From IMG/VR virus record IMGVR_UViG_3300042502_001233, positions 1 to 64,000 of that record: a stretch of 64,000 bases of DNA. One strand, written 5' to 3'. Both the position numbers and the translations under genes were made by a program. Positions 5,306 through 59,227 of the stretch are shown here, in pieces (position 1 is the first letter of the stretch; the number at the start of each line of letters is the position of its first letter). The notes below the pieces were generated by a model. It made no database searches, was not told the origin of the DNA, and was given only the letters and a program-made list of their open reading frames with translations.

Positions 5306-5320
5306 AACATTTATGTTTAG

Positions 5321-5393
5321 TTGAGTAAGAGGGTTTCGAACCCTACGCTACCACCCGTCTAGGTGGTCTTCTAACCAATTAAAGTATTACCCA
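5321..5393 (-). tRNA. degenerate tRNA, anticodon uncertain
   Basis: TGGGTAA/TTACTCA acceptor, D and T arms; anticodon loop not 7 nt. Confidence 0.45.
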
Positions 5394-39607: not shown

Positions 39608-40801
39608 TCAAGATAATCCTAATAATTTTTTAAATTTATCAGTTTCCATTTTTTGAATGGCTTTTCCAAGTTCAGGTCCAGGACCTATATTGAATTTTTC
39701 CATCGCTTCTGGACCAGTAACTGTTAGTCTGAACTCTTCAAAAGCATCTAGCAATTGTGATGATATACCTTCGTTGCTACCAAAATTTCTAATTTGGTCG
39801 TTGGATACTCCAGAAGTTTGTTGTACTTTCTTTAATAAGTAAGCAGTGTCAACATCTAACTTCAATAATGAAATTAAAAACACAATGGCTTTAATCTCAT
39901 CCGATGAGTATTTTAAATCATTTAGTTTTTTTCTCAATACATCAACGTTGTTACCTTTTAACAACCTAGCTAACAATACTATGTAATCATCAGCTTTGTA
40001 ATCAGAGTTTCTTCTAAATACTCTTGTGTCTACATCCAAATTAGGAAATATCCAATCAAACAATTTGTATTTGTCTAACATCAACAAGTAAGCGTCGGTT
40101 GATTTAGCTGATATAAGCCCTTTGATAAATTCATCTCTAATACGTTCACCAGAAATACCTTCAAGACTAGCATCTTGTTGTAACGCAGCATCTACGTCAG
40201 GGTCCAACCCACTACCAAATCTACCAGCCAGTCTTATACCTCTAAGTTTACGTAATTTATCTTCACTAAACCTGTCTTCTGATTTACCAACAGTGCGTAT
40301 AACAGAATTTTTTAAATCAACGATACCACCTACTAAATCTACTACTTCTTGGGTGTCCATATCATAAAACAAAGCATTTACACTAAAATCTCTTCTTAAA
40401 ACATCAGATTTTATATCTGAAAATTCAACGTAATCTGGTCGTCTACCATCACTACTACCGATATCTTTACGCATAGTAGCTATCTCATATTCACCATCTG
40501 TAGTTATAACATTAACCACACCAAACGCTTTACCTGTTTCCAATATATTTGTAACAAATTCTTGATTTTTTAATAAATTTATTACGTTATCTGGTGTGGC
40601 ATTTGTTACTAAATCAAAATCTTTTGGTGTTACATTAAGTAACATATCACGAACTGACCCACCAATAGGGTATAATTCAAAACCATTTTTTTTAAAAATT
40701 GAATGAATTTTATTAACATTTGTCGGAAATTTAAAATAAATTTTTAATCTCTTCTCTGATGTTAAATTTTTTTTTAAAATTTCCTTTATAATTGTTTTCA
40801 T
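39608..40801 (-). CDS. cca: CCA-adding tRNA nucleotidyltransferase (class II)
   Basis: GGSVRD..DFD, EIAT.R, RRDFSVNA, EDKLR.LR; most tRNAs here lack an encoded CCA. Confidence 0.88.
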   Translation of the reverse strand: MKTIIKEILKKNLTSEKRLKIYFKFPTNVNKIHSIFKKNGFELYPIGGSVRDMLLNVTPKDFDLVTNATPDNVINLLKNQEFVTNILETGKAFGVVNVITTDGEYEIATMRKDIGSSDGRRPDYVEFSDIKSDVLRRDFSVNALFYDMDTQEVVDLVGGIVDLKNSVIRTVGKSEDRFSEDKLRKLRGIRLAGRFGSGLDPDVDAALQQDASLEGISGERIRDEFIKGLISAKSTDAYLLMLDKYKLFDWIFPNLDVDTRVFRRNSDYKADDYIVLLARLLKGNNVDVLRKKLNDLKYSSDEIKAIVFLISLLKLDVDTAYLLKKVQQTSGVSNDQIRNFGSNEGISSQLLDAFEEFRLTVTGPEAMEKFNIGPGPELGKAIQKMETDKFKKLLGLS

Positions 40802-41673
40802 ATTTTATTATCATTTAAAATGTTTAATAACATTTTTTTAACAACATCAAATTTATTTTTAATATCAAATTCCCAAAATCTAATTATTTTAATATTATTG
40901 TCTTTTAACATTATTTCTTTTCTTTTATCTCTATCTATATTTTTAAGTTGAATGGAATCTAGGGTTTTATCTTTATAGACCAATGGGTTTGCATGCCAAT
41001 AATCACCATCACATTCCACCACTAAGTTATACTTAGGTAAATAAAAATCAACTAAAAAATTATTTATTCTATGATTTTTAATAAAATCTATTGATTCATC
41101 AATTAATAAATCTTTAATTTTTAATTCAATAATAGTTGGTTTTCTATTTTGAATCATCGCTTTATTTAAACGATTAATTATTATTTGTTTTTCTTCATCT
41201 GTTTTTTTAGACCAATTTAACTTAGCCTTTTCCGATAATTTCTCAGAATATTTTAAAATTCTTTCATCATTAAATTTAGTTTTCCCATTATTCCAAGCTG
41301 TTGAACCATACATAGGGTTATTTTCGCCACTTAAGCTTGGTAAGGTACCAGATTTAAACATATCAATTCTAGTTTTAGCTAACTTCTCAGATTTTATTCT
41401 AACTATTTGTGAATTTTCTTTAGTTTTACCTTTTAACGGTGAAACTTTACCAAACATTGCATTGTTTTCACCACTATTTAATCTAGATTTTATTTGATAT
41501 GTTTGTTCTTTAGAGTGTTTCAATTTTAATTTACCTATTTTAACACTAATCGCTTCTAATGTTCTATTATATTTCGAATTAAACAATGGATATATCTCAC
41601 TTACAGAAAAACCGTTATTTTCATATAATTCTCTTAAATACCTAACTTCTTCTTCAGACCAATATTTTCTCAT
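40798..41673 (-). CDS. Vsr/DUF559-like homing endonuclease with NUMOD3
   Basis: GENNPMYG; VDFY..VECDGDYWH..RFWE. Confidence 0.8.
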   Translation of the reverse strand: MRKYWSEEEVRYLRELYENNGFSVSEIYPLFNSKYNRTLEAISVKIGKLKLKHSKEQTYQIKSRLNSGENNAMFGKVSPLKGKTKENSQIVRIKSEKLAKTRIDMFKSGTLPSLSGENNPMYGSTAWNNGKTKFNDERILKYSEKLSEKAKLNWSKKTDEEKQIIINRLNKAMIQNRKPTIIELKIKDLLIDESIDFIKNHRINNFLVDFYLPKYNLVVECDGDYWHANPLVYKDKTLDSIQLKNIDRDKRKEIMLKDNNIKIIRFWEFDIKNKFDVVKKMLLNILNDNKI

Positions 41674-42974: not shown

Positions 42975-43025
42975 ACCTATAAATATCCTATAAAATAAAA
43001 AAGGGCCTCAGTGGGCCCTAATTTA

Positions 43026-43439
43026 TTATACTACATGTAGCTTTTCAATCAAATCTTTTTTGTATTGTTCCATAACTTTGTAATTTACGTCTGGAGCATC
43101 CATTGAAGCTATGATTTCTTTCAAACCATCAATTATAGGTTGTGTTTTTCTTTTAAGTCTAACACTCATGTAACCTTGGTCCAAAAACATAAGATGTTTA
43201 AGACCATTCTTAGCGTTAGGGCTTGACCAACCGTCAATGTTGAATTGGATGTTGATTCTGTTGGGTGTTAAATCTTCATTTAACAATATTCCCATCCAAT
43301 ATGTTTTACCATCTTTGGTTTTAGCGTCAAAAAGTCTAAAAGCTACTTTTTTATCGTTGATTGTTTTTACAAATACATGTTCTGATGTTTTGTTTAAATA
43401 TGTGTTCAATTCTTGTTGAACTTGTTCTAATGTTTTCAT
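43026..43439 (-). CDS. hypothetical protein
   Basis: 137-aa ORF downstream of RAPP minigene. Confidence 0.7.
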   Translation of the reverse strand: MKTLEQVQQELNTYLNKTSEHVFVKTINDKKVAFRLFDAKTKDGKTYWMGILLNEDLTPNRINIQFNIDGWSSPNAKNGLKHLMFLDQGYMSVRLKRKTQPIIDGLKEIIASMDAPDVNYKVMEQYKKDLIEKLHVV

Positions 43440-43556
43440 TTTTTTTTCTTTTTAAGTTTATTATTTTTATGTTTTGTCCAAGAACATAGACACGATGTCT
43501 ATGTTGATGTCTATGTTGGACATGTTGTCCAAGATAGTGTCCAAGTTATAATAAAC

Positions 43557-43586
43557 TTAAGGCGGTGCTCTGATAATCTATTTCAT
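43557..43586 (-). promoter_or_regulatory. amber-containing leader minigene M-K-(TAG)-I-I-R-A-P-P-stop
   Basis: ATG AAA TAG ATT ATC AGA GCA CCG CCT TAA. Confidence 0.55.
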
Positions 43587-43608
43587 AGTTTCTATTATTT
43601 AAAGTTTG

Positions 43609-43683
43609 AGGTCGGAGAGAGATTTGAACTCCCACCGTAAAGGTTCTTGCGGAACCAGTGCCTTACCATTCGACCATCCGACC
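43609..43683 (-). tRNA. atypical tRNA-Cys(GCA)-like
   Basis: GGTCGGA/TCCGACC, U73, GGTT-CCGCAAG-AACC. Confidence 0.6.
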
Positions 43684-43689
43684 CTGTTA

Positions 43690-43947
43690 TTACGGATAAA
43701 TCCTTGCGGTTATACCTTCATCCGTAGTTGTTATTTGTATCTTGCCTTTGAATTTCAACGACCCTTTGGTACTTGGGTTATCTGGCGTTTCTTTGGTTGA
43801 AAATCCTATACCAGAATCCATAACCAAGTGGTCCACATAATAGGTTTGACCTTTGGCTTTTATTACCCACATCGGAATGCTAGGTTCTTGCAAATGCATT
43901 TTGTTGAAATGAAATATAATCTCGGTTCTTTTATCTATGTTAAGCAT
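43690..43947 (-). CDS. hypothetical protein
   Basis: 85-aa ORF coupled to Pth2-like gene. Confidence 0.7.
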   Translation of the reverse strand: MLNIDKRTEIIFHFNKMHLQEPSIPMWVIKAKGQTYYVDHLVMDSGIGFSTKETPDNPSTKGSLKFKGKIQITTTDEGITARIYP

Positions 43948-44290
43948 ATTGAACCTCCTTTCCCATTAACGGACATGAGCTCGTTAATTTTTTGGCAGCA
44001 TCGGTTGGCTCAAAAGCAACAGCCGTTATTTCGTTACCCAAGTCAGGTTCACGGAAAATTGTGTGTTTGATACCCATAAAGATAGCTTTGGTAATCAATT
44101 TGATTAGCGCTTCTTCATCAGCGACAGTTAATAATGCTAAATAGTTTGATTTTGTTTGCCATTCGGTAGCTTCAACAGGGTGTTGATATTGGAAATCTAC
44201 CAAGGCATGAGCTGATTGAACAGCTTGTTGTGAAGGTGTTAAGTCACGTCTTGTGACAACTCTTAATTTTTGATTGTTAATCTAAGTCAT
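43940..44290 (-). CDS. peptidyl-tRNA hydrolase 2-like protein with in-frame TAG at codon 3
   Basis: ATG ACT TAG ATT... continues in frame: KLRVVTRRDL..QQAVQSAHA...FREPDLGNEITA. Confidence 0.75.
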
Positions 44291-44350
44291 AATTTCTAAT
44301 TTTTTGTTTATTATAAATATACCACACTTTTAAAAAATGTAAAGTGTTTG

Positions 44351-44423
44351 TAGTTCTAATCGGACTCGAACCGATATCTCTCCGTTTTAGAGGCGGGTGT
44401 ATTCACGTTAATACTATAGAACC
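44351..44423 (-). tRNA. amber suppressor tRNA (anticodon CTA)
   Basis: GGTTCTA/TAGAACT acceptor, loop CT-CTA-AA, canonical T arm; weak anticodon stem. Confidence 0.8.
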
Positions 44424-44473: not shown

Positions 44474-44686
44474 CTAACTTTTTTTCAAAAATTTTCCAAG
44501 TCTTAAAACTTTCTCTTTAAATTCCTCAAAAGTTCCGTTGTTTTCAATGATGATATCAGCACATGTTTTGTCAATATCAAACGATGATGGGTCTTCCAAC
44601 GGAAGTCTTTCAGACGCATCAACCCAAATGATTATATCAAATAAACCTTGTCTCATACACTCGTTGATTTCAGCTCTATCTCGCAT
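44474..44686 (-). pseudogene. 3' half of interrupted dNMP kinase-like gene
   Basis: continues 50297..50590 at YVG|MRD; IIWVDA, ADIIIENNG. Confidence 0.75.
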
Positions 44687-45302
44687 CTAAAGATAATTCA
44701 ATAATTAAATCGTTAACAACTTTTTTTAACGCTTTAATGTCTTTTTTATCATTATAAATAACTTTACTAAAGTTAGTATAATCATCTAGATTAGTTTCTG
44801 AGATATGGTTTAAATCACGTAAGCTGTTCTCTCTAACACCCATTGGGTCGCCTTCCAGTCGAATTAAATAACCACCTTCTTTAAGGATATAGTCAGCTTC
44901 ATTAACAAATCTAACATCTGGTATCACAATAATTTTACCATTATTTAACTTAGTATCTAATTCTTCATTAAAGAATGATTTAACCCAAATATCAGTATCA
45001 TAATTATCTCTAAATAAATCAGTACCAACTAATTGTAATGTTTCACCAATAGTTTTATCAAATTGTTTAATAACTATATTTTTTTGGTCTTGAGTATAAT
45101 TACGAATCTCATTGCAGAATGGTTTATTAGCTTCATGAGTTGTCGTCATACGTATACCACTAATTATTTCCGTAATTAACCTTAATTTATCAGCCAATGC
45201 ATGTCTTTCTACTTTACCATGTAATTGCTCAGCTAATAATTCAGCAAAGGTATCTTTACCACTACCTATTTTTCCACTAATACCTATAATTTTTTTTTTC
45301 AT
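44676..45302 (-). CDS. deoxynucleoside monophosphate kinase (element-borne replacement)
   Basis: GISGKIGSGKDT, LQ.VGT..R, DVRF.NE, HISE. Confidence 0.85.
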   Translation of the reverse strand: MKKKIIGISGKIGSGKDTFAELLAEQLHGKVERHALADKLRLITEIISGIRMTTTHEANKPFCNEIRNYTQDQKNIVIKQFDKTIGETLQLVGTDLFRDNYDTDIWVKSFFNEELDTKLNNGKIIVIPDVRFVNEADYILKEGGYLIRLEGDPMGVRENSLRDLNHISETNLDDYTNFSKVIYNDKKDIKALKKVVNDLIIELSLDAR

Positions 45303-45305
45303 ATT

Positions 45306-48300
45306 TTACATTTTAAATGCTGTAACATAAATAAATTTATCACTTTCTCTTAAAACCAAGTTATCAAAACCTATTTCTAAAAGTATTCTTTTAAATTCAT
45401 CTTCATTATCTTTCCATTGATTGGCTGTTTCTGCAATCATGATTGGTTGCATAGTTCTCAATACTCTGTAAGCTTCTTTTAAATAATCTTCATAATTGCT
45501 ACCCATAAGTGATAAACTAAAAACAACAACATCTATAGATTCATCGTCTAAAGGTAATTTTGAAATATCACAAGCTATTACTGAATCATCAATGGCTACG
45601 TGGTCAAATGATAACACTTTGTTGGGTATTTCAGTTTTTAAAAGGTTTTCACCACATCCAAAATCACCAACAATATAATCTTTACGTTTAATTTGTTTAG
45701 CGATTTCTTTATATGGTATTTCTGACCAAGTTTTTCTAGCTTCACGATACAAAGTATGATACTGATACCACTCAGTTGGGTCCTCGGTTAATCGTTTGTT
45801 AGTTGTAATAGAATTTGATACACCCCAGCGTTTATTCATTTGACTGAACTCACCATATTTAGGTAGGTTATGATTAACATAATTTGGATTCAAAGGTATT
45901 TTAAATTCTTCTCTATCAAACGTGATAATCTCACCGTTGTTTAAACGATTAACCCATTCGGCCAACTCTTGTTGTGCTTCAAACACTAATCGTTCTCTTG
46001 AAGGTAGGAGATTTCTAGGAACACGCCCATCAATTGCTAAATCACCCAAAGTTGCTTTAAATCTAATTATATTATGTCTACGTCTGTCCCAACTCCAAAT
46101 ATGTTCGCCAGCTGGTATAATAACTTGTGGAATATAAATGTTAACTTTATCAAATTTAGAACCTTGTCTATTAACACGACCAACTAATTGGTCATATTCA
46201 GAACTGGTCCATGGAAGTACTATTGGTATCAATGTGTCACACACATATTGAATACCGTCTACACCAGTACCAACTGGTGCCGAACCAATTAAAACATCTA
46301 ATTTACCCTTTTTAAAAGCTTCTAAACCACTTTTATCGTCACCAGTATAAAATCCTATACTAAAACCTAAATCTTTTACGAATTTACCTATAATATCGGT
46401 TAATTCAGTAACATAATATGTGTATATTAAAGTCCCCCTTTTTATTTTATCTTTAACAGAATCAAGTTTAGTATTAATTAAAACTTTTTCGAACTCGCTA
46501 ACAGCACCTTTAGGTATTGCTATGATTTCATTAAACAAATGACTACCATCAGATTCTATGATTTCTTCGTTAACTGAAATACCATAATTAGGTTTATAAC
46601 GAAGACCATATCTTGTTAATGCTTTATACATTTCAATACCATTTACAATGTTTTCTTTGGTTTCTAATTCGTTATGAGATTCACCTGTTAACAATTCAAT
46701 TAATTTTTTAGGTTCTGTTAAATTGTTAATAATTGGTGTTGCCGACATAGCCATAACTAATAAATTTTCATTATCTTCTTTAGAGTTTATTATTAGTTTT
46801 TTAACAACATTCCTTCTAATAGATTCTTCGTTATCACGCTGCTTAACATTTTGAACTTCATCTAAAATTATGTAATCAATCTGATTATATTTTAACAATT
46901 CAGAAACAATATATTCACCATCTTCTAACTGAAACGTTTCATAATTTAATACTAAATAATTATAAACATTTTCTTTTAATTTTATGTTATGTTTATGAAC
47001 TAAATTATAATTAGAATTAACACCTTCTAATTCTTTCTTAACGTAAATCTGATTGTTAGTGAAATATTCATTTATGGACTCAACCCAGCCCTCAACAGTT
47101 GCATTATTACAAATTATTATAGTGTTTTTAGCACCAGCTAACCTACCAGCAAATATTGCAGATAAAGTTTTACCAGCACCAGTTCCAGACCAGTTACCGT
47201 ATTTTTTCTCTTTAATTAAACGATAACTAATTAGTTTTTGCATTAAGTTTGGCTGATGTTGAAAAATGTAATCACTTGGGGCGACTATTTTACAAACTTC
47301 TTCGTATTCACTAAAAAACCAGTCTTTAATTATTGTAAACCTTTCACCACCAGTTTCACCTCTTAAAGTATCAACATCTATTTGATTGTTAAGAACTTTA
47401 TTCCACAATTTTTTTAATTGATTCTTTAACAAGAAATCAATATTTTCATCATCCAAAGAAGCGGTAACCATTGTATTATCATACATATGTAATTCTTTAA
47501 TTGGGTCTAAAGGTGCTAATGACTCTGGTTCTTCTTCAGTAATTTCATCAACATTACCCTCAACTAAATCAACTTCTAAATTAGTTGGTTCGTTTAGAAT
47601 AGAATCATTGTTGGTGTCATCGTCAGACTCATCGTTTTCTAACGTATCTAATATATCGTGAATTAATCTTTCTCTTTCCTCCGAACCAGCTTCAGAAGAA
47701 GTTAAAGAATCTAATGACCCTATTTGTTGTATTTTTTTAGCGAGATTGTTTGAATTTATTATGGTTATTAGTTCAACTGAGTCCATATAAATTAAATCTT
47801 TTTCTAAAGATTTAATAAAGTCTAACATATAACGTTTATTCCAATAGTGACCATCACCTAAAGAACCTAACCAATCACCCATAGAAACCCACCCAGAATA
47901 TTTGTATGTTTTTTCTGGCATTGCTGGGATGTTGTCTGGTTTTTTTATGTTTTTCCATTCACTATAAGATTTAAGACCTAAAGTTCTAGCATATTCTCTA
48001 GCTTCTTCAAATGGTAAAAACTCCCTAAAATTTGATAACTTACCATGACCTAACCAATCACTCCAAGATACCCAACCAGATTCTTTATAAACTTGAGATG
48101 GTGATGCTGGAATTTCATCTGGTTTAGCTGAAGATTTAGAAAACAACCTCCATTCTTTTTCACCAGTTAATTTTAAACTTCTAGCATATTCTCTAGCTTC
48201 TTCAAATGGTAGATAATCTCTTTTGTTACATGATATGTAATTAGTTCCTAACCAATCACCCAGCGACACCCAACCAGAATCTTTATAAACCCTATCTGGG

Positions 48301-49202
48301 GCACTAGGTATATTATTTGGTCTTAATTCAGATTTAATAAATTCAACCCATTCCTTTTGTCGGGTTATATTTAATTTTCTAACATATTCTCTAGCCTCTT
48401 CAAACTGTAAAAATTTTTTATCAAAATTTGATAACTTACCGTGACCTAACCAATCAACCCAAGATACCCAACCAGAATCTTTATATGTTTTATTTGGTGA
48501 TTTAGGAATTTTAACATCATAATCGGTAGATTTTAAATATGTTCTAAACTCATTAGTGTTATTTAATTTTAAATTATGTATTATTTTCCTAGCTTCTTTA
48601 AAATCATAAAACTCATCAAAATCTTTTTTATAACCTAAAAAATCACCCCAAGATTTCCACCCATAATTTTTATACATTACGTGAGGTGAATAAGGTAAAC
48701 CATTCACATTTGTTTTGTTTAAATATTCATGATATTTAGTTTGTGATGTTAAACCTAAAATTTTAACTACGTTTTTGGCCTCTTCAAAGGATAAATAATT
48801 TCTATTTTTTAAAGCAACGTAATTAGTTCCTAACCAATCACCCAGCGACACCCAACCAGAATCTTTATATATTTTATCTGGCGATGTAGGTATGTTGTGA
48901 GGCCTTAATTCAGACTTATAAAAATTTTTCCAATCTTGTTGTGTTTTTAATCCTAAACTCTTAACAAAATTTTTAGCAATTTCAAAAGGTAGGTAACCGT
49001 CTTTTAGATTCACCGATGAACATTTAGTTTTATTTAACAAAGCATATGGTGTTATTAAATGTTCTGTATTAAACTTTTTATCAATAACCACCACTTTTTG
49101 GTTAGTATTGACATATTCGACTTTGGAATAATCATAATTATCGTTCCAATTACCACTATCTCTTAATTTTTGTAAAAACTCTTTTGTTTTATCAGTCATC
49201 AT
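45306..49202 (-). CDS. repeat-containing SF2 helicase fused to SAM methyltransferase
   Basis: 6 repeats PFEEAR...GWVSWGDWLG; GTGAGKT, DEVQ, SAT; DFGCGE, FSLSLMG. Confidence 0.8.
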   Translation of the reverse strand: MMTDKTKEFLQKLRDSGNWNDNYDYSKVEYVNTNQKVVVIDKKFNTEHLITPYALLNKTKCSSVNLKDGYLPFEIAKNFVKSLGLKTQQDWKNFYKSELRPHNIPTSPDKIYKDSGWVSLGDWLGTNYVALKNRNYLSFEEAKNVVKILGLTSQTKYHEYLNKTNVNGLPYSPHVMYKNYGWKSWGDFLGYKKDFDEFYDFKEARKIIHNLKLNNTNEFRTYLKSTDYDVKIPKSPNKTYKDSGWVSWVDWLGHGKLSNFDKKFLQFEEAREYVRKLNITRQKEWVEFIKSELRPNNIPSAPDRVYKDSGWVSLGDWLGTNYISCNKRDYLPFEEAREYARSLKLTGEKEWRLFSKSSAKPDEIPASPSQVYKESGWVSWSDWLGHGKLSNFREFLPFEEAREYARTLGLKSYSEWKNIKKPDNIPAMPEKTYKYSGWVSMGDWLGSLGDGHYWNKRYMLDFIKSLEKDLIYMDSVELITIINSNNLAKKIQQIGSLDSLTSSEAGSEERERLIHDILDTLENDESDDDTNNDSILNEPTNLEVDLVEGNVDEITEEEPESLAPLDPIKELHMYDNTMVTASLDDENIDFLLKNQLKKLWNKVLNNQIDVDTLRGETGGERFTIIKDWFFSEYEEVCKIVAPSDYIFQHQPNLMQKLISYRLIKEKKYGNWSGTGAGKTLSAIFAGRLAGAKNTIIICNNATVEGWVESINEYFTNNQIYVKKELEGVNSNYNLVHKHNIKLKENVYNYLVLNYETFQLEDGEYIVSELLKYNQIDYIILDEVQNVKQRDNEESIRRNVVKKLIINSKEDNENLLVMAMSATPIINNLTEPKKLIELLTGESHNELETKENIVNGIEMYKALTRYGLRYKPNYGISVNEEIIESDGSHLFNEIIAIPKGAVSEFEKVLINTKLDSVKDKIKRGTLIYTYYVTELTDIIGKFVKDLGFSIGFYTGDDKSGLEAFKKGKLDVLIGSAPVGTGVDGIQYVCDTLIPIVLPWTSSEYDQLVGRVNRQGSKFDKVNIYIPQVIIPAGEHIWSWDRRRHNIIRFKATLGDLAIDGRVPRNLLPSRERLVFEAQQELAEWVNRLNNGEIITFDREEFKIPLNPNYVNHNLPKYGEFSQMNKRWGVSNSITTNKRLTEDPTEWYQYHTLYREARKTWSEIPYKEIAKQIKRKDYIVGDFGCGENLLKTEIPNKVLSFDHVAIDDSVIACDISKLPLDDESIDVVVFSLSLMGSNYEDYLKEAYRVLRTMQPIMIAETANQWKDNEDEFKRILLEIGFDNLVLRESDKFIYVTAFKM

Positions 49203-58849: not shown

Positions 58850-59227
58850 TGGTGGAGTTATGGGGAATCGAACCCCAGTGTTGCATATTCTTCAAAAGCT
58901 TTCTACATGTTTATCTAGTTTCTAATTCTAGCAAAGTTGTGCTGCGTTATTTATCCCGATGGAAGTGCAGCGACCATCGTTCCTTTTTTTACAACTAGGA
59001 AGTTGGTTCTTGGTGATTTATCACCATCAAGTGGAATTACCACTATTAGCTATAATTAGGCTACAGCTACCTCTCCTGCGAAACTGAATGCAGCTTCGTT
59101 AAGGAAATTTTCAGAAACGATGAAATCGTTGTCAATTCAATTTTTTAATAGACAGATTAAAGTGCTTCCAATCTAGCACTACATGCTTACGATTTACGAC
59201 TATATCCAGTCAATACCGTTTAACCCC
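58850..59227 (-). ncRNA. ssrA: tmRNA
   Basis: GGGGTTA/TAACTCC-A-CCA acceptor with G3:U70, T arm, tag ORF DNDFIVSENFLNEAAFSFAGEVAVA*. Confidence 0.9.

What the first reader, a model, noticed from the sequence alone, without database searches (positions are those of the whole stretch)
43465..43586. Amber-gated RAPP arrest-peptide minigene followed by alternative hairpins
ATG AAA TAG ATT ATC AGA GCA CCG CCT TAA encodes M-K-amber-I-I-R-A-P-P-stop. The amber position and TAG-ATT context are the same as in the Pth gene of this operon, and it ends in RAPP, the stalling motif of ApdA/ApdP (SecM has RAGP). Downstream, TTGGACA occurs three times against one TGTCCAA, and AACATAGACA twice against one TGTCTATGTT, allowing mutually exclusive folds ahead of gene 43439-43026. 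Inference: amber readthrough causes stalling that switches the downstream gene.
Basis: partly seen in the sequence, partly recalled or inferred. Interest (0 to 1): 0.75.

Follow-up and report, generated by a model that had tools for sequence, protein, structure and literature searches.

The report
Amber-gated arrest-peptide leader in jumbo phage
A nine-codon upstream reading frame with a conserved in-frame UAG and a ribosome-stalling RAPP-type ending sits at the foot of an RNA stem in front of a phage gene. It probably lets the phage's own amber-suppressor tRNA switch that gene on, which would give such orphan phage suppressor tRNAs a job.

Summary
The window is the first 64 kb of a 362-kb lake-water jumbo phage that uses the standard genetic code. 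Its genes lack Shine-Dalgarno sites and have Bacteroidota-type start regions.

- **Conservation.** The minigene (43586..43557, minus strand; M-K-UAG-I-I-R-A-P-P-stop) recurs in at least 45 of 160 related phage loci, in 26 or more distinct versions.
- **Invariant parts.** The AUG, the UAG and the 5-6 codon distance from UAG to stop never change. Arg, Pro, Ile, Thr and stop codons vary synonymously, so the frame is read through the UAG.
- **Motif.** The ending varies as R-(A/G, rarely P/E/K/D/S)-P-(P/T/N). This matches the published mutational tolerance of RAPP-class arrest motifs.
- **Structure.** The stop codon lies in the 5' arm of a covarying stem of about 12 bp. The 3' arm ends about 12 nt before the downstream start codon.
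- **Modelling.** A ribosome at the arrest site frees that start region. A ribosome terminating at UAG does not.
- **Linkage.** A tRNA(CUA) gene lies in 33 of 36 leader loci. The neighbouring PTH2 gene also carries UAG at codon 3.

Nothing has been tested at the bench. The role of the repeated TTGGACA/ATAGACA words is unknown.

The parts
44350..44423 (-). tRNA with anticodon CUA, the amber suppressor and proposed trans-acting input
   Evidence: Found by ARAGORN and by Rfam tRNA at 50.6 bits. Cloverleaf shown. A CUA tRNA is present in 95 of 160 related loci and in 33 of 36 leader loci.
43940..44290 (-). PTH2-family peptidyl-tRNA hydrolase gene with UAG as codon 3 (44284..44282); a second amber-gated start in the same gene cluster
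   Evidence: Pfam PF01981 at 2.5e-5 on the part after the UAG and NCBIfam Pth2. Sequence. There is no canonical start codon for 26 codons after the UAG. A start-proximal UAG is conserved in relatives.
43690..43947 (-). Conserved 85-aa protein of unknown function; its start overlaps the PTH2 stop
   Evidence: ORF. Found in 160 related loci. In nine relatives it carries an in-frame UAG, at codon 2-3 in eight of them. AF2 pLDDT 90, no informative fold match.
43608..43683 (-). tRNA-Cys(GCA); its 3' end lies 21 nt before the leader AUG
   Evidence: In 26 of 41 related leaders a tRNA gene ends 16-60 nt upstream.
43587..43607 (-). Leader start region: A at -14..-12 and at -3 relative to the leader AUG
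   Evidence: Across 26 leaders, A occupies -14..-11 in 20-24 of them and -3 in 24. The same signature appears upstream of the phage's 514 called genes and in Flavobacterium johnsoniae (PMC6847099).
43557..43586 (-). Leader ORF M-K-UAG-I-I-R-A-P-P-stop. UAG at 43580..43578, Arg 43571..43569, Pro-Pro 43565..43560, UAA 43559..43557
43548..43560 (-). 5' arm of the outer stem; starts at the last base of the last sense codon and contains the UAA
   Evidence: (I1).
43538..43544 (-). First, unpaired copy of TTGGACA
43516..43532 (-). Hairpin A: TTGGACA, 3-nt loop, TGTCCAA
   Evidence: (I2). Conserved in close relatives.
43483..43517 (-). Hairpin B (AACATAGACA, 3-nt loop, TGTCTATGTT; 43505..43483) preceded by a second direct AACATAGACA copy (43517..43508)
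   Evidence: I3, I4, D2. Absent in L001-L003. Placed before hairpin A in L036/L071.
43475..43481 (-). Third TTGGACA copy, just upstream of the 3' arm
   Evidence: I5.
43452..43464 (-). 3' arm of the outer stem; ends at -13 relative to the gene A AUG
   Evidence: (I1).
43440..43451 (-). A-rich 12-nt spacer between the stem and the gene A start codon
   Evidence: The median spacer in relatives is 11.5 nt.
43026..43439 (-). Gene A, the regulated gene: a 137-aa protein of a phage-only family with no known function
   Evidence: ORF. No Pfam, PHROG or NCBIfam hit. 181 homologues, all but one unnamed or 'hypothetical protein' and none with a Pfam domain except one fusion protein. AF2 pLDDT 88, no fold match.
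43002..43019 (-). Terminator-like GC-rich hairpin with a T-run that closes the unit

Best explanation
This is a cis-acting leader-peptide switch that reports amber suppression.

1. Ribosomes start at the leader AUG, which has the SD-less, A-rich start region typical of this phage.
2. At codon 3 they meet UAG. If release factor wins, the ribosome leaves. Its footprint ends several nucleotides short of the outer stem, so the stem stays closed. The closed stem pairs positions -13 to -25 of the gene A start region, including part of the A-tract that Bacteroidia ribosomes rely on.
3. If the phage tRNA(CUA) decodes the UAG, the ribosome goes on through I-I-R-A-P.
4. It then pauses or arrests. Either R-A-P-tRNA sits in the P site with the Pro codon in the A site, or the ribosome stalls at the adjacent stop codon.
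5. In that position it covers the 5' arm of the stem, which begins at the last base of the A-site codon. The 3' arm and the gene A start region become single-stranded, and gene A is translated.

Shown here: a conserved frame read through the UAG, a covarying stem with fixed geometry, linkage to the CUA tRNA, and a motif whose natural variation mirrors RAPP-class tolerance. Inferred: actual readthrough, actual stalling, the direction of the switch (on when suppressed), and translation initiation as the regulated step.
For: (1) Coding constraint through the UAG.
- There are 26 distinct 10-codon versions plus shorter and longer variants in at least 45 of 160 loci. ATG, TAG and the following AT are invariant.
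- Arg is AGA, CGA or AGG. Pro is CCG, CCA, CCC or CCT. Thr is ACT, ACA or ACC. Ile is ATT or ATA. The stop is TAA, TGA or TAG.
- Among short ORFs in these loci that end in an RxP-type motif, 60 contain a UAG and 7 do not.
- The distance from UAG to stop is always 5-6 codons, even where the UAG is codon 5.

(2) Motif.
- Arg and the first Pro are kept in all but four of the variants found: ILNKPP, and KVKPP and IKFIPP; a fourth, RIPIN, has no Pro after R-x.
- The position between them is A or G in most, then P, E, K, D or S. The last residue is P, T or N, or a stop.
- Published mutagenesis matches this. Arg is irreplaceable, Ala to Gly is fully tolerated, and P, S, D and E are partly tolerated (PMC12992588). 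A-site preference is Pro, then Cys, Asn, Thr (PMC7897499). A minimal RxPP suffices for arrest (PMC10951233).

(3) Stem.
- In the window the arms are 13 nt and 100% complementary. The MFE is -32.6 kcal/mol, z = -4.85.
- Across 26 leaders there are 21 distinct arm sequences.
- Cognate arms pair at a mean of -10.73 kcal/mol against -6.8 +/- 0.38 for permuted partners. None of 20,000 permutations reached the observed value.
- The 5' arm starts one base before the stop codon in 17 of 26 leaders. The 3' arm ends a median of 11.5 nt before the downstream AUG.

(4) Switch model. The energy needed to open positions -22..+12 of the downstream start region averages 5.5 kcal/mol for the free leader, 6.2 with a ribosome at the UAG, and 1.4 with a ribosome at the arrest site. 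All 28 leaders behave the same way.

(5) Host context. 462 of 514 genes have no SD. A is enriched at -14..-11 and at -3, the Flavobacterium johnsoniae signature, where initiation is tuned by secondary structure and these adenines. The leader AUG carries the same signature.

(6) Link to the suppressor.
- tRNA(CUA) is present in 33 of 36 leader loci, and directly upstream of the leader in four.
- A start-proximal in-frame UAG occurs 122 times on the coding strand of the related loci, against 5 for TAA and 4 for TGA. Nearly all are in the PTH2 gene or the 85-aa gene.
- In L085 and L175 gene A has no leader. It follows, by 3 nt, an 85-aa gene that itself has UAG at codon 3.

(7) The genome is not recoded.
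Against: - There are no expression, ribosome-occupancy or toeprint data. The only public runs that hold the sequence are DNA contigs.
- In the window and most relatives, 11-12 nt before the gene A AUG, and the AUG itself, are unpaired even with the stem closed. Repression by the closed stem is therefore plausible but not certain.
- Known RAPP peptides need Pro in the A site in the ApdA and ApdP contexts. About half of these leaders have Thr or Asn there.
- The nascent chain is only 8 residues long at the proposed arrest. No RAPP-class peptide this short has been tested.
- A few distant variants lack the Arg.
- The conserved RGACA repeats have no role in this model.
- The amino acid carried by the CUA tRNA is unknown.
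- Partial suppression would also extend the roughly 10% of phage genes that end in TAG.
Confidence: 0.6

Rival explanations
1. Same sensor, different output. The amber-gated, stall-prone leader is real, but the ribosome on the 5' arm controls something other than start-site accessibility. Candidates are Rho loading (as in tnaC), mRNA cleavage or stability, or delivery of terminating ribosomes across the closed stem to the gene A AUG, which lies 12 nt from the stem base.
For: The AUG and 11-12 nt upstream are unpaired even in the closed form. The constant ~12-nt distance between the stem base and the AUG, together with the stop codon sitting at the stem base, brings stop and start close in space. 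Gene A has no SD, like nearly all genes here.
Against: The computed opening cost of the start region falls by about 5 kcal/mol in all 28 leaders when the arrest site is occupied. No U-tract follows the stem. Shunting across a hairpin has no bacterial precedent that I know of. A stall motif is not needed for plain coupling.
Confidence: 0.2
2. No suppression is involved. AUG-NNN-UAG is a complete two-codon minigene, and the conserved hexapeptide is made by re-initiation at the adjacent AUU or AUA.
For: The codon after UAG is ATT or ATA in 26 of 26 main-class leaders and never ATC. AUU is a known weak start codon (own knowledge).
Against: Variants have GTT or ACA after the UAG. PTH2 and 85-aa genes have AAY, ACN or GTN there. 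The UAG is never replaced by TAA or TGA, which a simple stop would allow. The CUA tRNA co-occurs with the leader.
Confidence: 0.05
3. A DNA-level element. A promoter overlaps the minigene, and the TTGGACA/ATAGACA direct and inverted repeats are operator sites for a DNA-binding regulator of gene A.
For: The scan finds a sigma-70-like match: TTATCA, 17 nt, TATTAT at 43576..43548. The words occur as arrays of two direct copies plus one inverted copy, 60 forward against 26 reverse.
Against: The promoter match is at chance level: 8 found against 6.2 expected. Relatives break both hexamers, while the paired stem partner compensates. The host type uses different promoter consensus (own knowledge). 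Repeat spacing is 8 or 12 nt, so it is not helically phased. Distant leaders keep a hairpin of unrelated sequence. This reading cannot explain the synonymous codon pattern.
Confidence: 0.05
4. A lambda bar-like minigene. Its product is dropped peptidyl-tRNA, titrating or reporting peptidyl-tRNA hydrolase activity. This would fit its place beside a PTH2 gene.
For: AUG-NNN-stop is the bar architecture (own knowledge). A PTH2 gene lies in the same cluster. Short peptidyl-tRNAs on stalled ribosomes are prone to drop-off (own knowledge).
Against: It does not explain the amino-acid-level conservation after the UAG, the fixed UAG-to-stop distance, or the stem at the second stop codon. It may still add to the main model, because the phage PTH2 could recycle tRNA from aborted leader peptides.
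Confidence: 0.05

Closest known systems
RAPP-class ribosome arrest peptides (ApdA, ApdP, ApcA; SecM with RAGP)
   Same: The C-terminal R-A-P-P core lies at the end of a small ORF upstream of the regulated gene. Natural variation at each of the four positions mirrors the published tolerance. The arrest site is positioned so that the ribosome disrupts an mRNA stem.
   Different: The ORF has nine codons, not about 100-170. It has no signal peptide or membrane anchor, so no pulling-force release is possible. The downstream gene is not Sec or YidC. It is in a phage. The A-site residue is often Thr or Asn. An in-frame UAG gates entry to the motif. There is no sequence homology; this is a functional resemblance only.
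Drug-dependent leader peptides of ermC/cat type (translational attenuation)
   Same: A very short leader ORF. A ribosome stalled on it occupies the first segment of a stem whose partner segment lies at the start region of the downstream gene.
   Different: The trigger is decoding of a stop codon by a suppressor tRNA, not an antibiotic. The stem covers the upstream part of an SD-less start region, not an SD and AUG.
Synthetic 'Uaa transcriptional switch': UAG inserted in the tna leader peptide (reviewed in PMC6412442)
   Same: [quoted passage not shown]
   Different: That system is engineered and acts through Rho-dependent termination. This one is natural, conserved in many phages, and probably acts on translation initiation.
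Stop-codon-recoded phages (TAG read as an amino acid in late genes, with a phage suppressor tRNA)
   Same: A phage-encoded tRNA(CUA) is needed to express a subset of phage genes.
   Different: This genome keeps the standard code: 95.5% ORF coverage, with TAG ending about 9-10% of genes. In-frame UAGs occur only at codons 2-6 of two or three genes and in this leader.
Phage lambda bar two-codon minigenes
   Same: AUG-NNN-stop with a good start region, and a functional link to peptidyl-tRNA hydrolase.
   Different: Here the codons after the stop are conserved as protein, and the stop is always UAG.

Membership tests
RAPP-class arrest peptides (ApdA/ApdP/ApcA/SecM type) | C-terminal core R-(A/G)-P-(P/G) with irreplaceable Arg and Pro | tested here: met
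   The window has R-A-P-P. Across the main-class leaders R and P are kept, the position between them is mostly A or G, and the last residue is P, T or N. A few distant variants (ILNKPP, KVKPP, IKFIPP) lack the Arg.
RAPP-class arrest peptides (ApdA/ApdP/ApcA/SecM type) | [quoted passage not shown] | not testable with these tools
   Needs toeprinting, an in vitro translation assay or cryo-EM.
RAPP-class arrest peptides (ApdA/ApdP/ApcA/SecM type) | N-terminal signal peptide or membrane segment; monitors the Sec/YidC machinery encoded downstream | tested here: not met
   The ORF has 9 codons. The downstream gene belongs to a phage-only family of unknown function. The leader also precedes two other unrelated gene families.
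Leader-peptide translational attenuators (ermC type) | Short leader ORF whose stall site places the ribosome on one arm of a stem, with the other arm at the downstream start region | tested here: met
   The stop codon lies inside the 5' arm, and the 3' arm ends at -13 from the AUG. The arms covary. The computed opening energy falls from 5.5-6.2 to 1.4 kcal/mol.
Leader-peptide translational attenuators (ermC type) | The start codon and ribosome-binding site themselves are sequestered in the off state | tested here: inconclusive
   Only -13 to -25 is paired in most leaders. The AUG and 11-12 nt upstream are free. In five of 26 leaders the arm ends 0-3 nt from the AUG. Whether this suffices in an SD-less system is not known.
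Stop-codon-recoded phage genome (TAG as a sense codon) | Many genes, typically late ones, interrupted by in-frame TAG | tested here: not met
   ORFs of 100 aa or more cover 95.5% of the genome under the standard code. The only real gene with an early in-frame TAG is PTH2.
Lambda bar-type minigene | The function resides in the two-codon ORF alone, with no constraint beyond its stop | tested here: not met
   Amino-acid-level conservation and a fixed length after the UAG.
Intrinsic-terminator attenuator | GC-rich stem followed by a U-tract | tested here: not met
   The outer stem is A/U-rich and is followed by an A-tract. The scan finds a terminator only after gene A.

The most novel reading that the evidence does not exclude
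The phage tRNA(CUA) is a trans-acting regulator rather than a decoding aid. It controls a small regulon of start-proximal amber codons in a standard-code jumbo phage lineage. The regulon comprises the PTH2 hydrolase, the 85-aa protein and, through this arrest-peptide leader, gene A. The leader would then be a natural suppression sensor: it turns 'my tRNA supply chain is working, or release factor 1 is outcompeted' into expression of a gene. It would also be the shortest RAPP-class arrest ORF known.
Probability: 0.5. Interest if true: 0.9.

Novelty: new variant of a known kind. Interest (0 to 1): 0.8.

Why it matters
Many jumbo phages that use the standard code carry amber-suppressor tRNAs with no known target. 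The XacN1 study looked for targets and found none (PMC5852040). This locus offers concrete, conserved targets: UAG at codons 2-6 of a peptidyl-tRNA hydrolase gene and a neighbouring gene, and UAG at codon 3 of a leader peptide.

If the model holds, it shows three things. A tRNA can act as a gene-specific switch. RAPP-type arrest can work in a nine-codon ORF and in phages. Nature already uses the design that synthetic biologists built by putting UAG into the tna leader.

It would also be a compact, portable part of about 110-150 nt for suppression-dependent control in SD-less Bacteroidota systems.

Tried and rejected
- **Promoter reading of the minigene region.** The match is at chance level and is broken in relatives.
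- **Genome-wide regulatory motif.** TTGGACA and AACATAGACA are not used elsewhere upstream of genes.
- **ATG-NNN-TAG-ATT as a general gene start in this genome.** Of 10 matches, only PTH2 and the leader are real. The others lie inside genes in another frame.
- **Genome-wide recoding.** Rejected.
- **RNAalifold on a plain MAFFT alignment of 28 leaders.** It gave no structure because the variable loop misaligns the 3' arms. I replaced it with a test of cognate against permuted arms.
- **Phage GenBank collection.** No relative by DNA or protein.
- **The 17-nt palindrome pattern in IMG/VR.** It gave 60 loci. Eight were the phage group (L001-L003, L019, L031, L036, L047, L050); the others I read as unrelated chance matches.
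- **Function of gene A.** No Pfam, PHROG or NCBIfam hit, no informative Atlas hit, and a confident AF2 model with no fold match.
- **Function of the 85-aa protein.** The same result.
- **Identity of the CUA tRNA.** No clear paralogue among the 45 phage tRNAs.
- **Public reads.** Only DNA contigs hold the locus. They are identical, so they give no extra variants and no transcript ends.
- **T4 gene 60-type bypassing.** Considered and dropped. Gene A has its own conserved AUG and N-terminus, and no matching landing codon.

Full report
**What the window is.** The window is the first 64 kb of a single 362,018-bp contig. It carries 32 tRNA genes and a tmRNA, and nearly all genes lie on the minus strand. 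G+C is about 31%. The same DNA is held by lake-water metagenomes from several studies. Under the standard code, stop-to-stop ORFs of 100 aa or more cover 95.5% of the genome, and TAG ends 40 of 460 such ORFs. The genome is therefore not recoded. Of 514 crudely called genes, 462 have no Shine-Dalgarno core. Adenine is enriched at -14..-11 and at -3. That is the start-region signature described for Flavobacterium johnsoniae, where initiation is tuned by mRNA structure and these adenines (PMC6847099). From this I infer a Bacteroidota-type host.

**The observation.** On the minus strand the spacer between tRNA-Cys (43683..43608) and a 137-aa ORF (43439..43026, 'gene A') contains ATG AAA TAG ATT ATC AGA GCA CCG CCT TAA at 43586..43557. 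It also contains three TTGGACA copies against one TGTCCAA, and two AACATAGACA copies against one TGTCTATGTT. These words are clustered far beyond chance. The PTH2-family gene 700 nt upstream starts ATG ACT TAG ATT, and a tRNA with anticodon CUA lies just before it. The start contexts of PTH2 and the minigene agree at 22 of 29 positions by my own count. It brackets all the hairpins (I1), and its 5' arm contains the minigene's UAA.

**Relatives.** A search with gene A found three close relatives. A DNA pattern search found two more. A search with the conserved 85-aa protein encoded just upstream brought in 160 loci from IMG/VR and JGI metagenomes covering fresh water, sea and soil.

In 37 of these loci a strict pattern finds the minigene downstream of the 85-aa gene, in 26 distinct sequences. 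Looser scans add further forms such as M-T-UAG-V-I-R-G-P-T, M-C-UAG-T-I-R-G-P-T, M-K-K-T-UAG-I-K-Y-R-G-P, M-K-UAG-K-V-K-P-P and M-K-Q-M-UAG-I-K-F-I-P-P.

Several features stand out:
- The ATG, the TAG and the following AT are invariant.
- Arg is AGA, CGA or AGG; Pro is any of four codons; Thr any of three; Ile is ATT or ATA; the stop is TAA, TGA or TAG.
- Third positions of the Pro codon are the most variable sites in the ORF.
- Short ORFs in these loci that end in an RxP-type motif contain a UAG in 60 cases and lack one in 7.
- The UAG is never TAA or TGA.
- The number of sense codons between the UAG and the stop is always 5 or 6, even when the UAG is codon 5.

This is the signature of a frame that is translated through the UAG. 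A stop followed by re-initiation at AUU is unlikely, because some leaders and many PTH2 and 85-aa genes have GTT, ACN or AAY after the UAG.

**The motif.** The family consensus is I-(x)-R-x-P-x-stop. The residue between Arg and Pro is Ala or Gly in most versions, and Pro, Glu, Lys, Asp or Ser in a few. The last residue is Pro, Thr or Asn, or the stop follows directly. Published saturation mutagenesis of ApdA, ApdP and ApcA found the following:
- Arg is irreplaceable. Ala to Gly is fully permissive or better. Pro, Ser, Asp and Glu are partly permissive (PMC12992588).
- For the A-site residue, Pro is best, followed by Cys, Asn and Thr (PMC7897499).
- A minimal RxPP was reported to suffice for arrest (PMC10951233).

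So the natural variation reproduces the experimental tolerance at all four positions. This is the strongest argument that the ending is a stall signal. RAPP as such is only the window's variant.

**The RNA structure.** The window leader folds into the outer stem enclosing two hairpins (-32.6 kcal/mol, z = -4.85). Close relatives have one hairpin, and the order of hairpins A and B is swapped in L036/L071. All 28 leaders examined fold with a long-range stem whose 5' arm starts at or next to the stop codon.

There are 21 distinct arm sequences. Compensatory changes are visible, for example TATTAT/ATAATA against TATTTT/AAAATA. Cognate 5' and 3' arms pair at a mean of -10.73 kcal/mol, against -6.8 +/- 0.38 for permuted partners, and none of 20,000 permutations reached the observed value. 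The 5' arm begins one base before the stop codon in 17 of 26 leaders. The 3' arm ends a median of 11.5 nt before the downstream AUG. In the window this pairs A-13 and A-14 of the gene A start region.

**The switch model.** I forced a ribosome-sized stretch of the leader to be single-stranded and computed the energy needed to open positions -22..+12 of the downstream start region. The mean is 5.5 kcal/mol for the free leader, 6.2 with a ribosome whose A site is on the UAG, and 1.4 with a ribosome whose P site is on the penultimate sense codon. The direction was the same in all 28 leaders. The footprint figures are established knowledge rather than results measured here: the toeprint lies about +16 from the first P-site base, and the helicase site at about +11. 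With those figures, a ribosome terminating at the UAG ends several nucleotides short of the stem. That explains the constant 5-6 codon spacer.

**Link to the suppressor tRNA.**
- A CUA tRNA is present in 95 of 160 loci and in 33 of 36 leader loci. The three exceptions are short contigs.
- In four loci it lies directly upstream of the leader.
- In-frame UAG at codons 2-6, followed by a long ORF with no nearby start codon, occurs 122 times on the coding strand of these loci. TAA does so 5 times and TGA 4 times. Nearly all cases are in the PTH2 gene or the 85-aa gene.
- In L085 and L175 gene A has no leader. It follows, by 3 nt, an 85-aa gene that itself has UAG at codon 3. Gene A is thus amber-dependent by a different route.
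- In this genome, PTH2 and the leader are the only such sites.
- Genes that end in TAG have A as the next base in 12 of 51 cases, against 180 of 417 for TAA. All the gates have TAG-A. This is weak support for context-dependent suppression.

**Why codon 3?** This is inference from established knowledge. Release on a dipeptidyl-tRNA is inefficient, so a suppressor competes well there, and failure costs only a dipeptide. Very short peptidyl-tRNAs on paused ribosomes tend to drop off, which would give the co-encoded PTH2 hydrolase a role in recycling tRNA.

**What is regulated.** Gene A is a phage-only family. Its 181 homologues are unnamed or called 'hypothetical protein', apart from one stray annotation, and none has a Pfam domain except one fusion protein. 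A confident model (pLDDT 88) matches no known fold. A terminator-like hairpin follows the gene. The same leader precedes two other unrelated gene families in some relatives, so it behaves as a portable cassette.

**What remains open.**
- In 21 of 28 leaders the RGACA words form arrays of two direct copies plus one inverted copy, with a further forward copy near the 3' arm or the AUG. There are 60 forward copies against 26 reverse. Distant leaders instead have an unrelated hairpin.
- The amino acid carried by the CUA tRNA is unknown.
- No transcript or ribosome data exist.

**Comparison and novelty.** The element works like an ermC- or secM-type leader and carries a RAPP-class core. It is not a member of the Sec/YidC-monitoring family: it has nine codons, no targeting signal and an unrelated downstream gene. 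A synthetic counterpart exists, namely UAG placed in the tna leader (PMC6412442). Four literature searches found no natural amber-gated leader peptide and no description of start-proximal ambers as targets of phage suppressor tRNAs. The XacN1 paper states that no targets could be found. I class it as a new variant of a known kind and rate its interest as high.

Noticed in passing
window 43940-44290 (-), tRNA at 44350-44423 (-); related loci L065-L224: The PTH2-family peptidyl-tRNA hydrolase gene has UAG as codon 3, just downstream of the tRNA(CUA) gene. A start-proximal UAG (codon 2-6) recurs 122 times on the coding strand of 160 related loci, against 5 TAA and 4 TGA. Nearly all cases are in the PTH2 gene or the 85-aa gene.
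   Followed up: partly
window 43940-43947 (-): The PTH2 stop codon overlaps the start of the 85-aa gene (ATGCTTAA), which suggests translational coupling. One of the phage's few strong SD sequences (GGAGG) precedes that start.
   Followed up: no
window 44240-44290 (-) against L001 2190-2240: The first 51 nt of the PTH2 ORF are identical between the window and L001, while the rest of the gene has diverged markedly. This hints at an extra nucleotide-level constraint at the amber-gated start.
   Followed up: no
window 58850-59227 (-): A phage-encoded tmRNA (Rfam RF00023, 63 bits, full length). Together with PTH2, a CCA-adding enzyme (39608-40801) and 45 tRNAs, it forms a translation quality-control toolkit.
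   Followed up: no
window 5320-5393 (-): ARAGORN calls a tRNA with a four-base anticodon (agac). It could be a frameshift-suppressor-like tRNA or a misfolded call.
   Followed up: no
window 44474-45302 (-): The deoxynucleotide monophosphate kinase appears split into a 208-aa ORF and a 70-aa ORF that overlap by 11 nt. Both hit phrog_139. It may be a frameshift, a split gene or two genes.
   Followed up: no
whole genome (G000): Gene starts lack Shine-Dalgarno sequences (462 of 514) and show A enrichment at -14..-11 and -3. This is the Flavobacterium-type initiation signature and points to a Bacteroidota host.
   Followed up: partly
window 40798-41673 (-): A Vsr/DUF559/HNH-like homing-endonuclease gene sits between the CCA-adding enzyme gene and a 408-aa ORF.
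   Followed up: no
window 45306-49202 (-): A 1298-aa ORF has about seven tandem copies of a ~55-aa unit containing the motif KDSGWVS-GDWLG. These are followed by regions that look by eye like a helicase and a methyltransferase; I did not search them.
   Followed up: no
L085 and L175 (about 2501-2770): In these relatives gene A has no leader. It starts 3 nt after an 85-aa gene that itself begins M-M-UAG, an alternative way of making gene A depend on amber suppression.
   Followed up: partly
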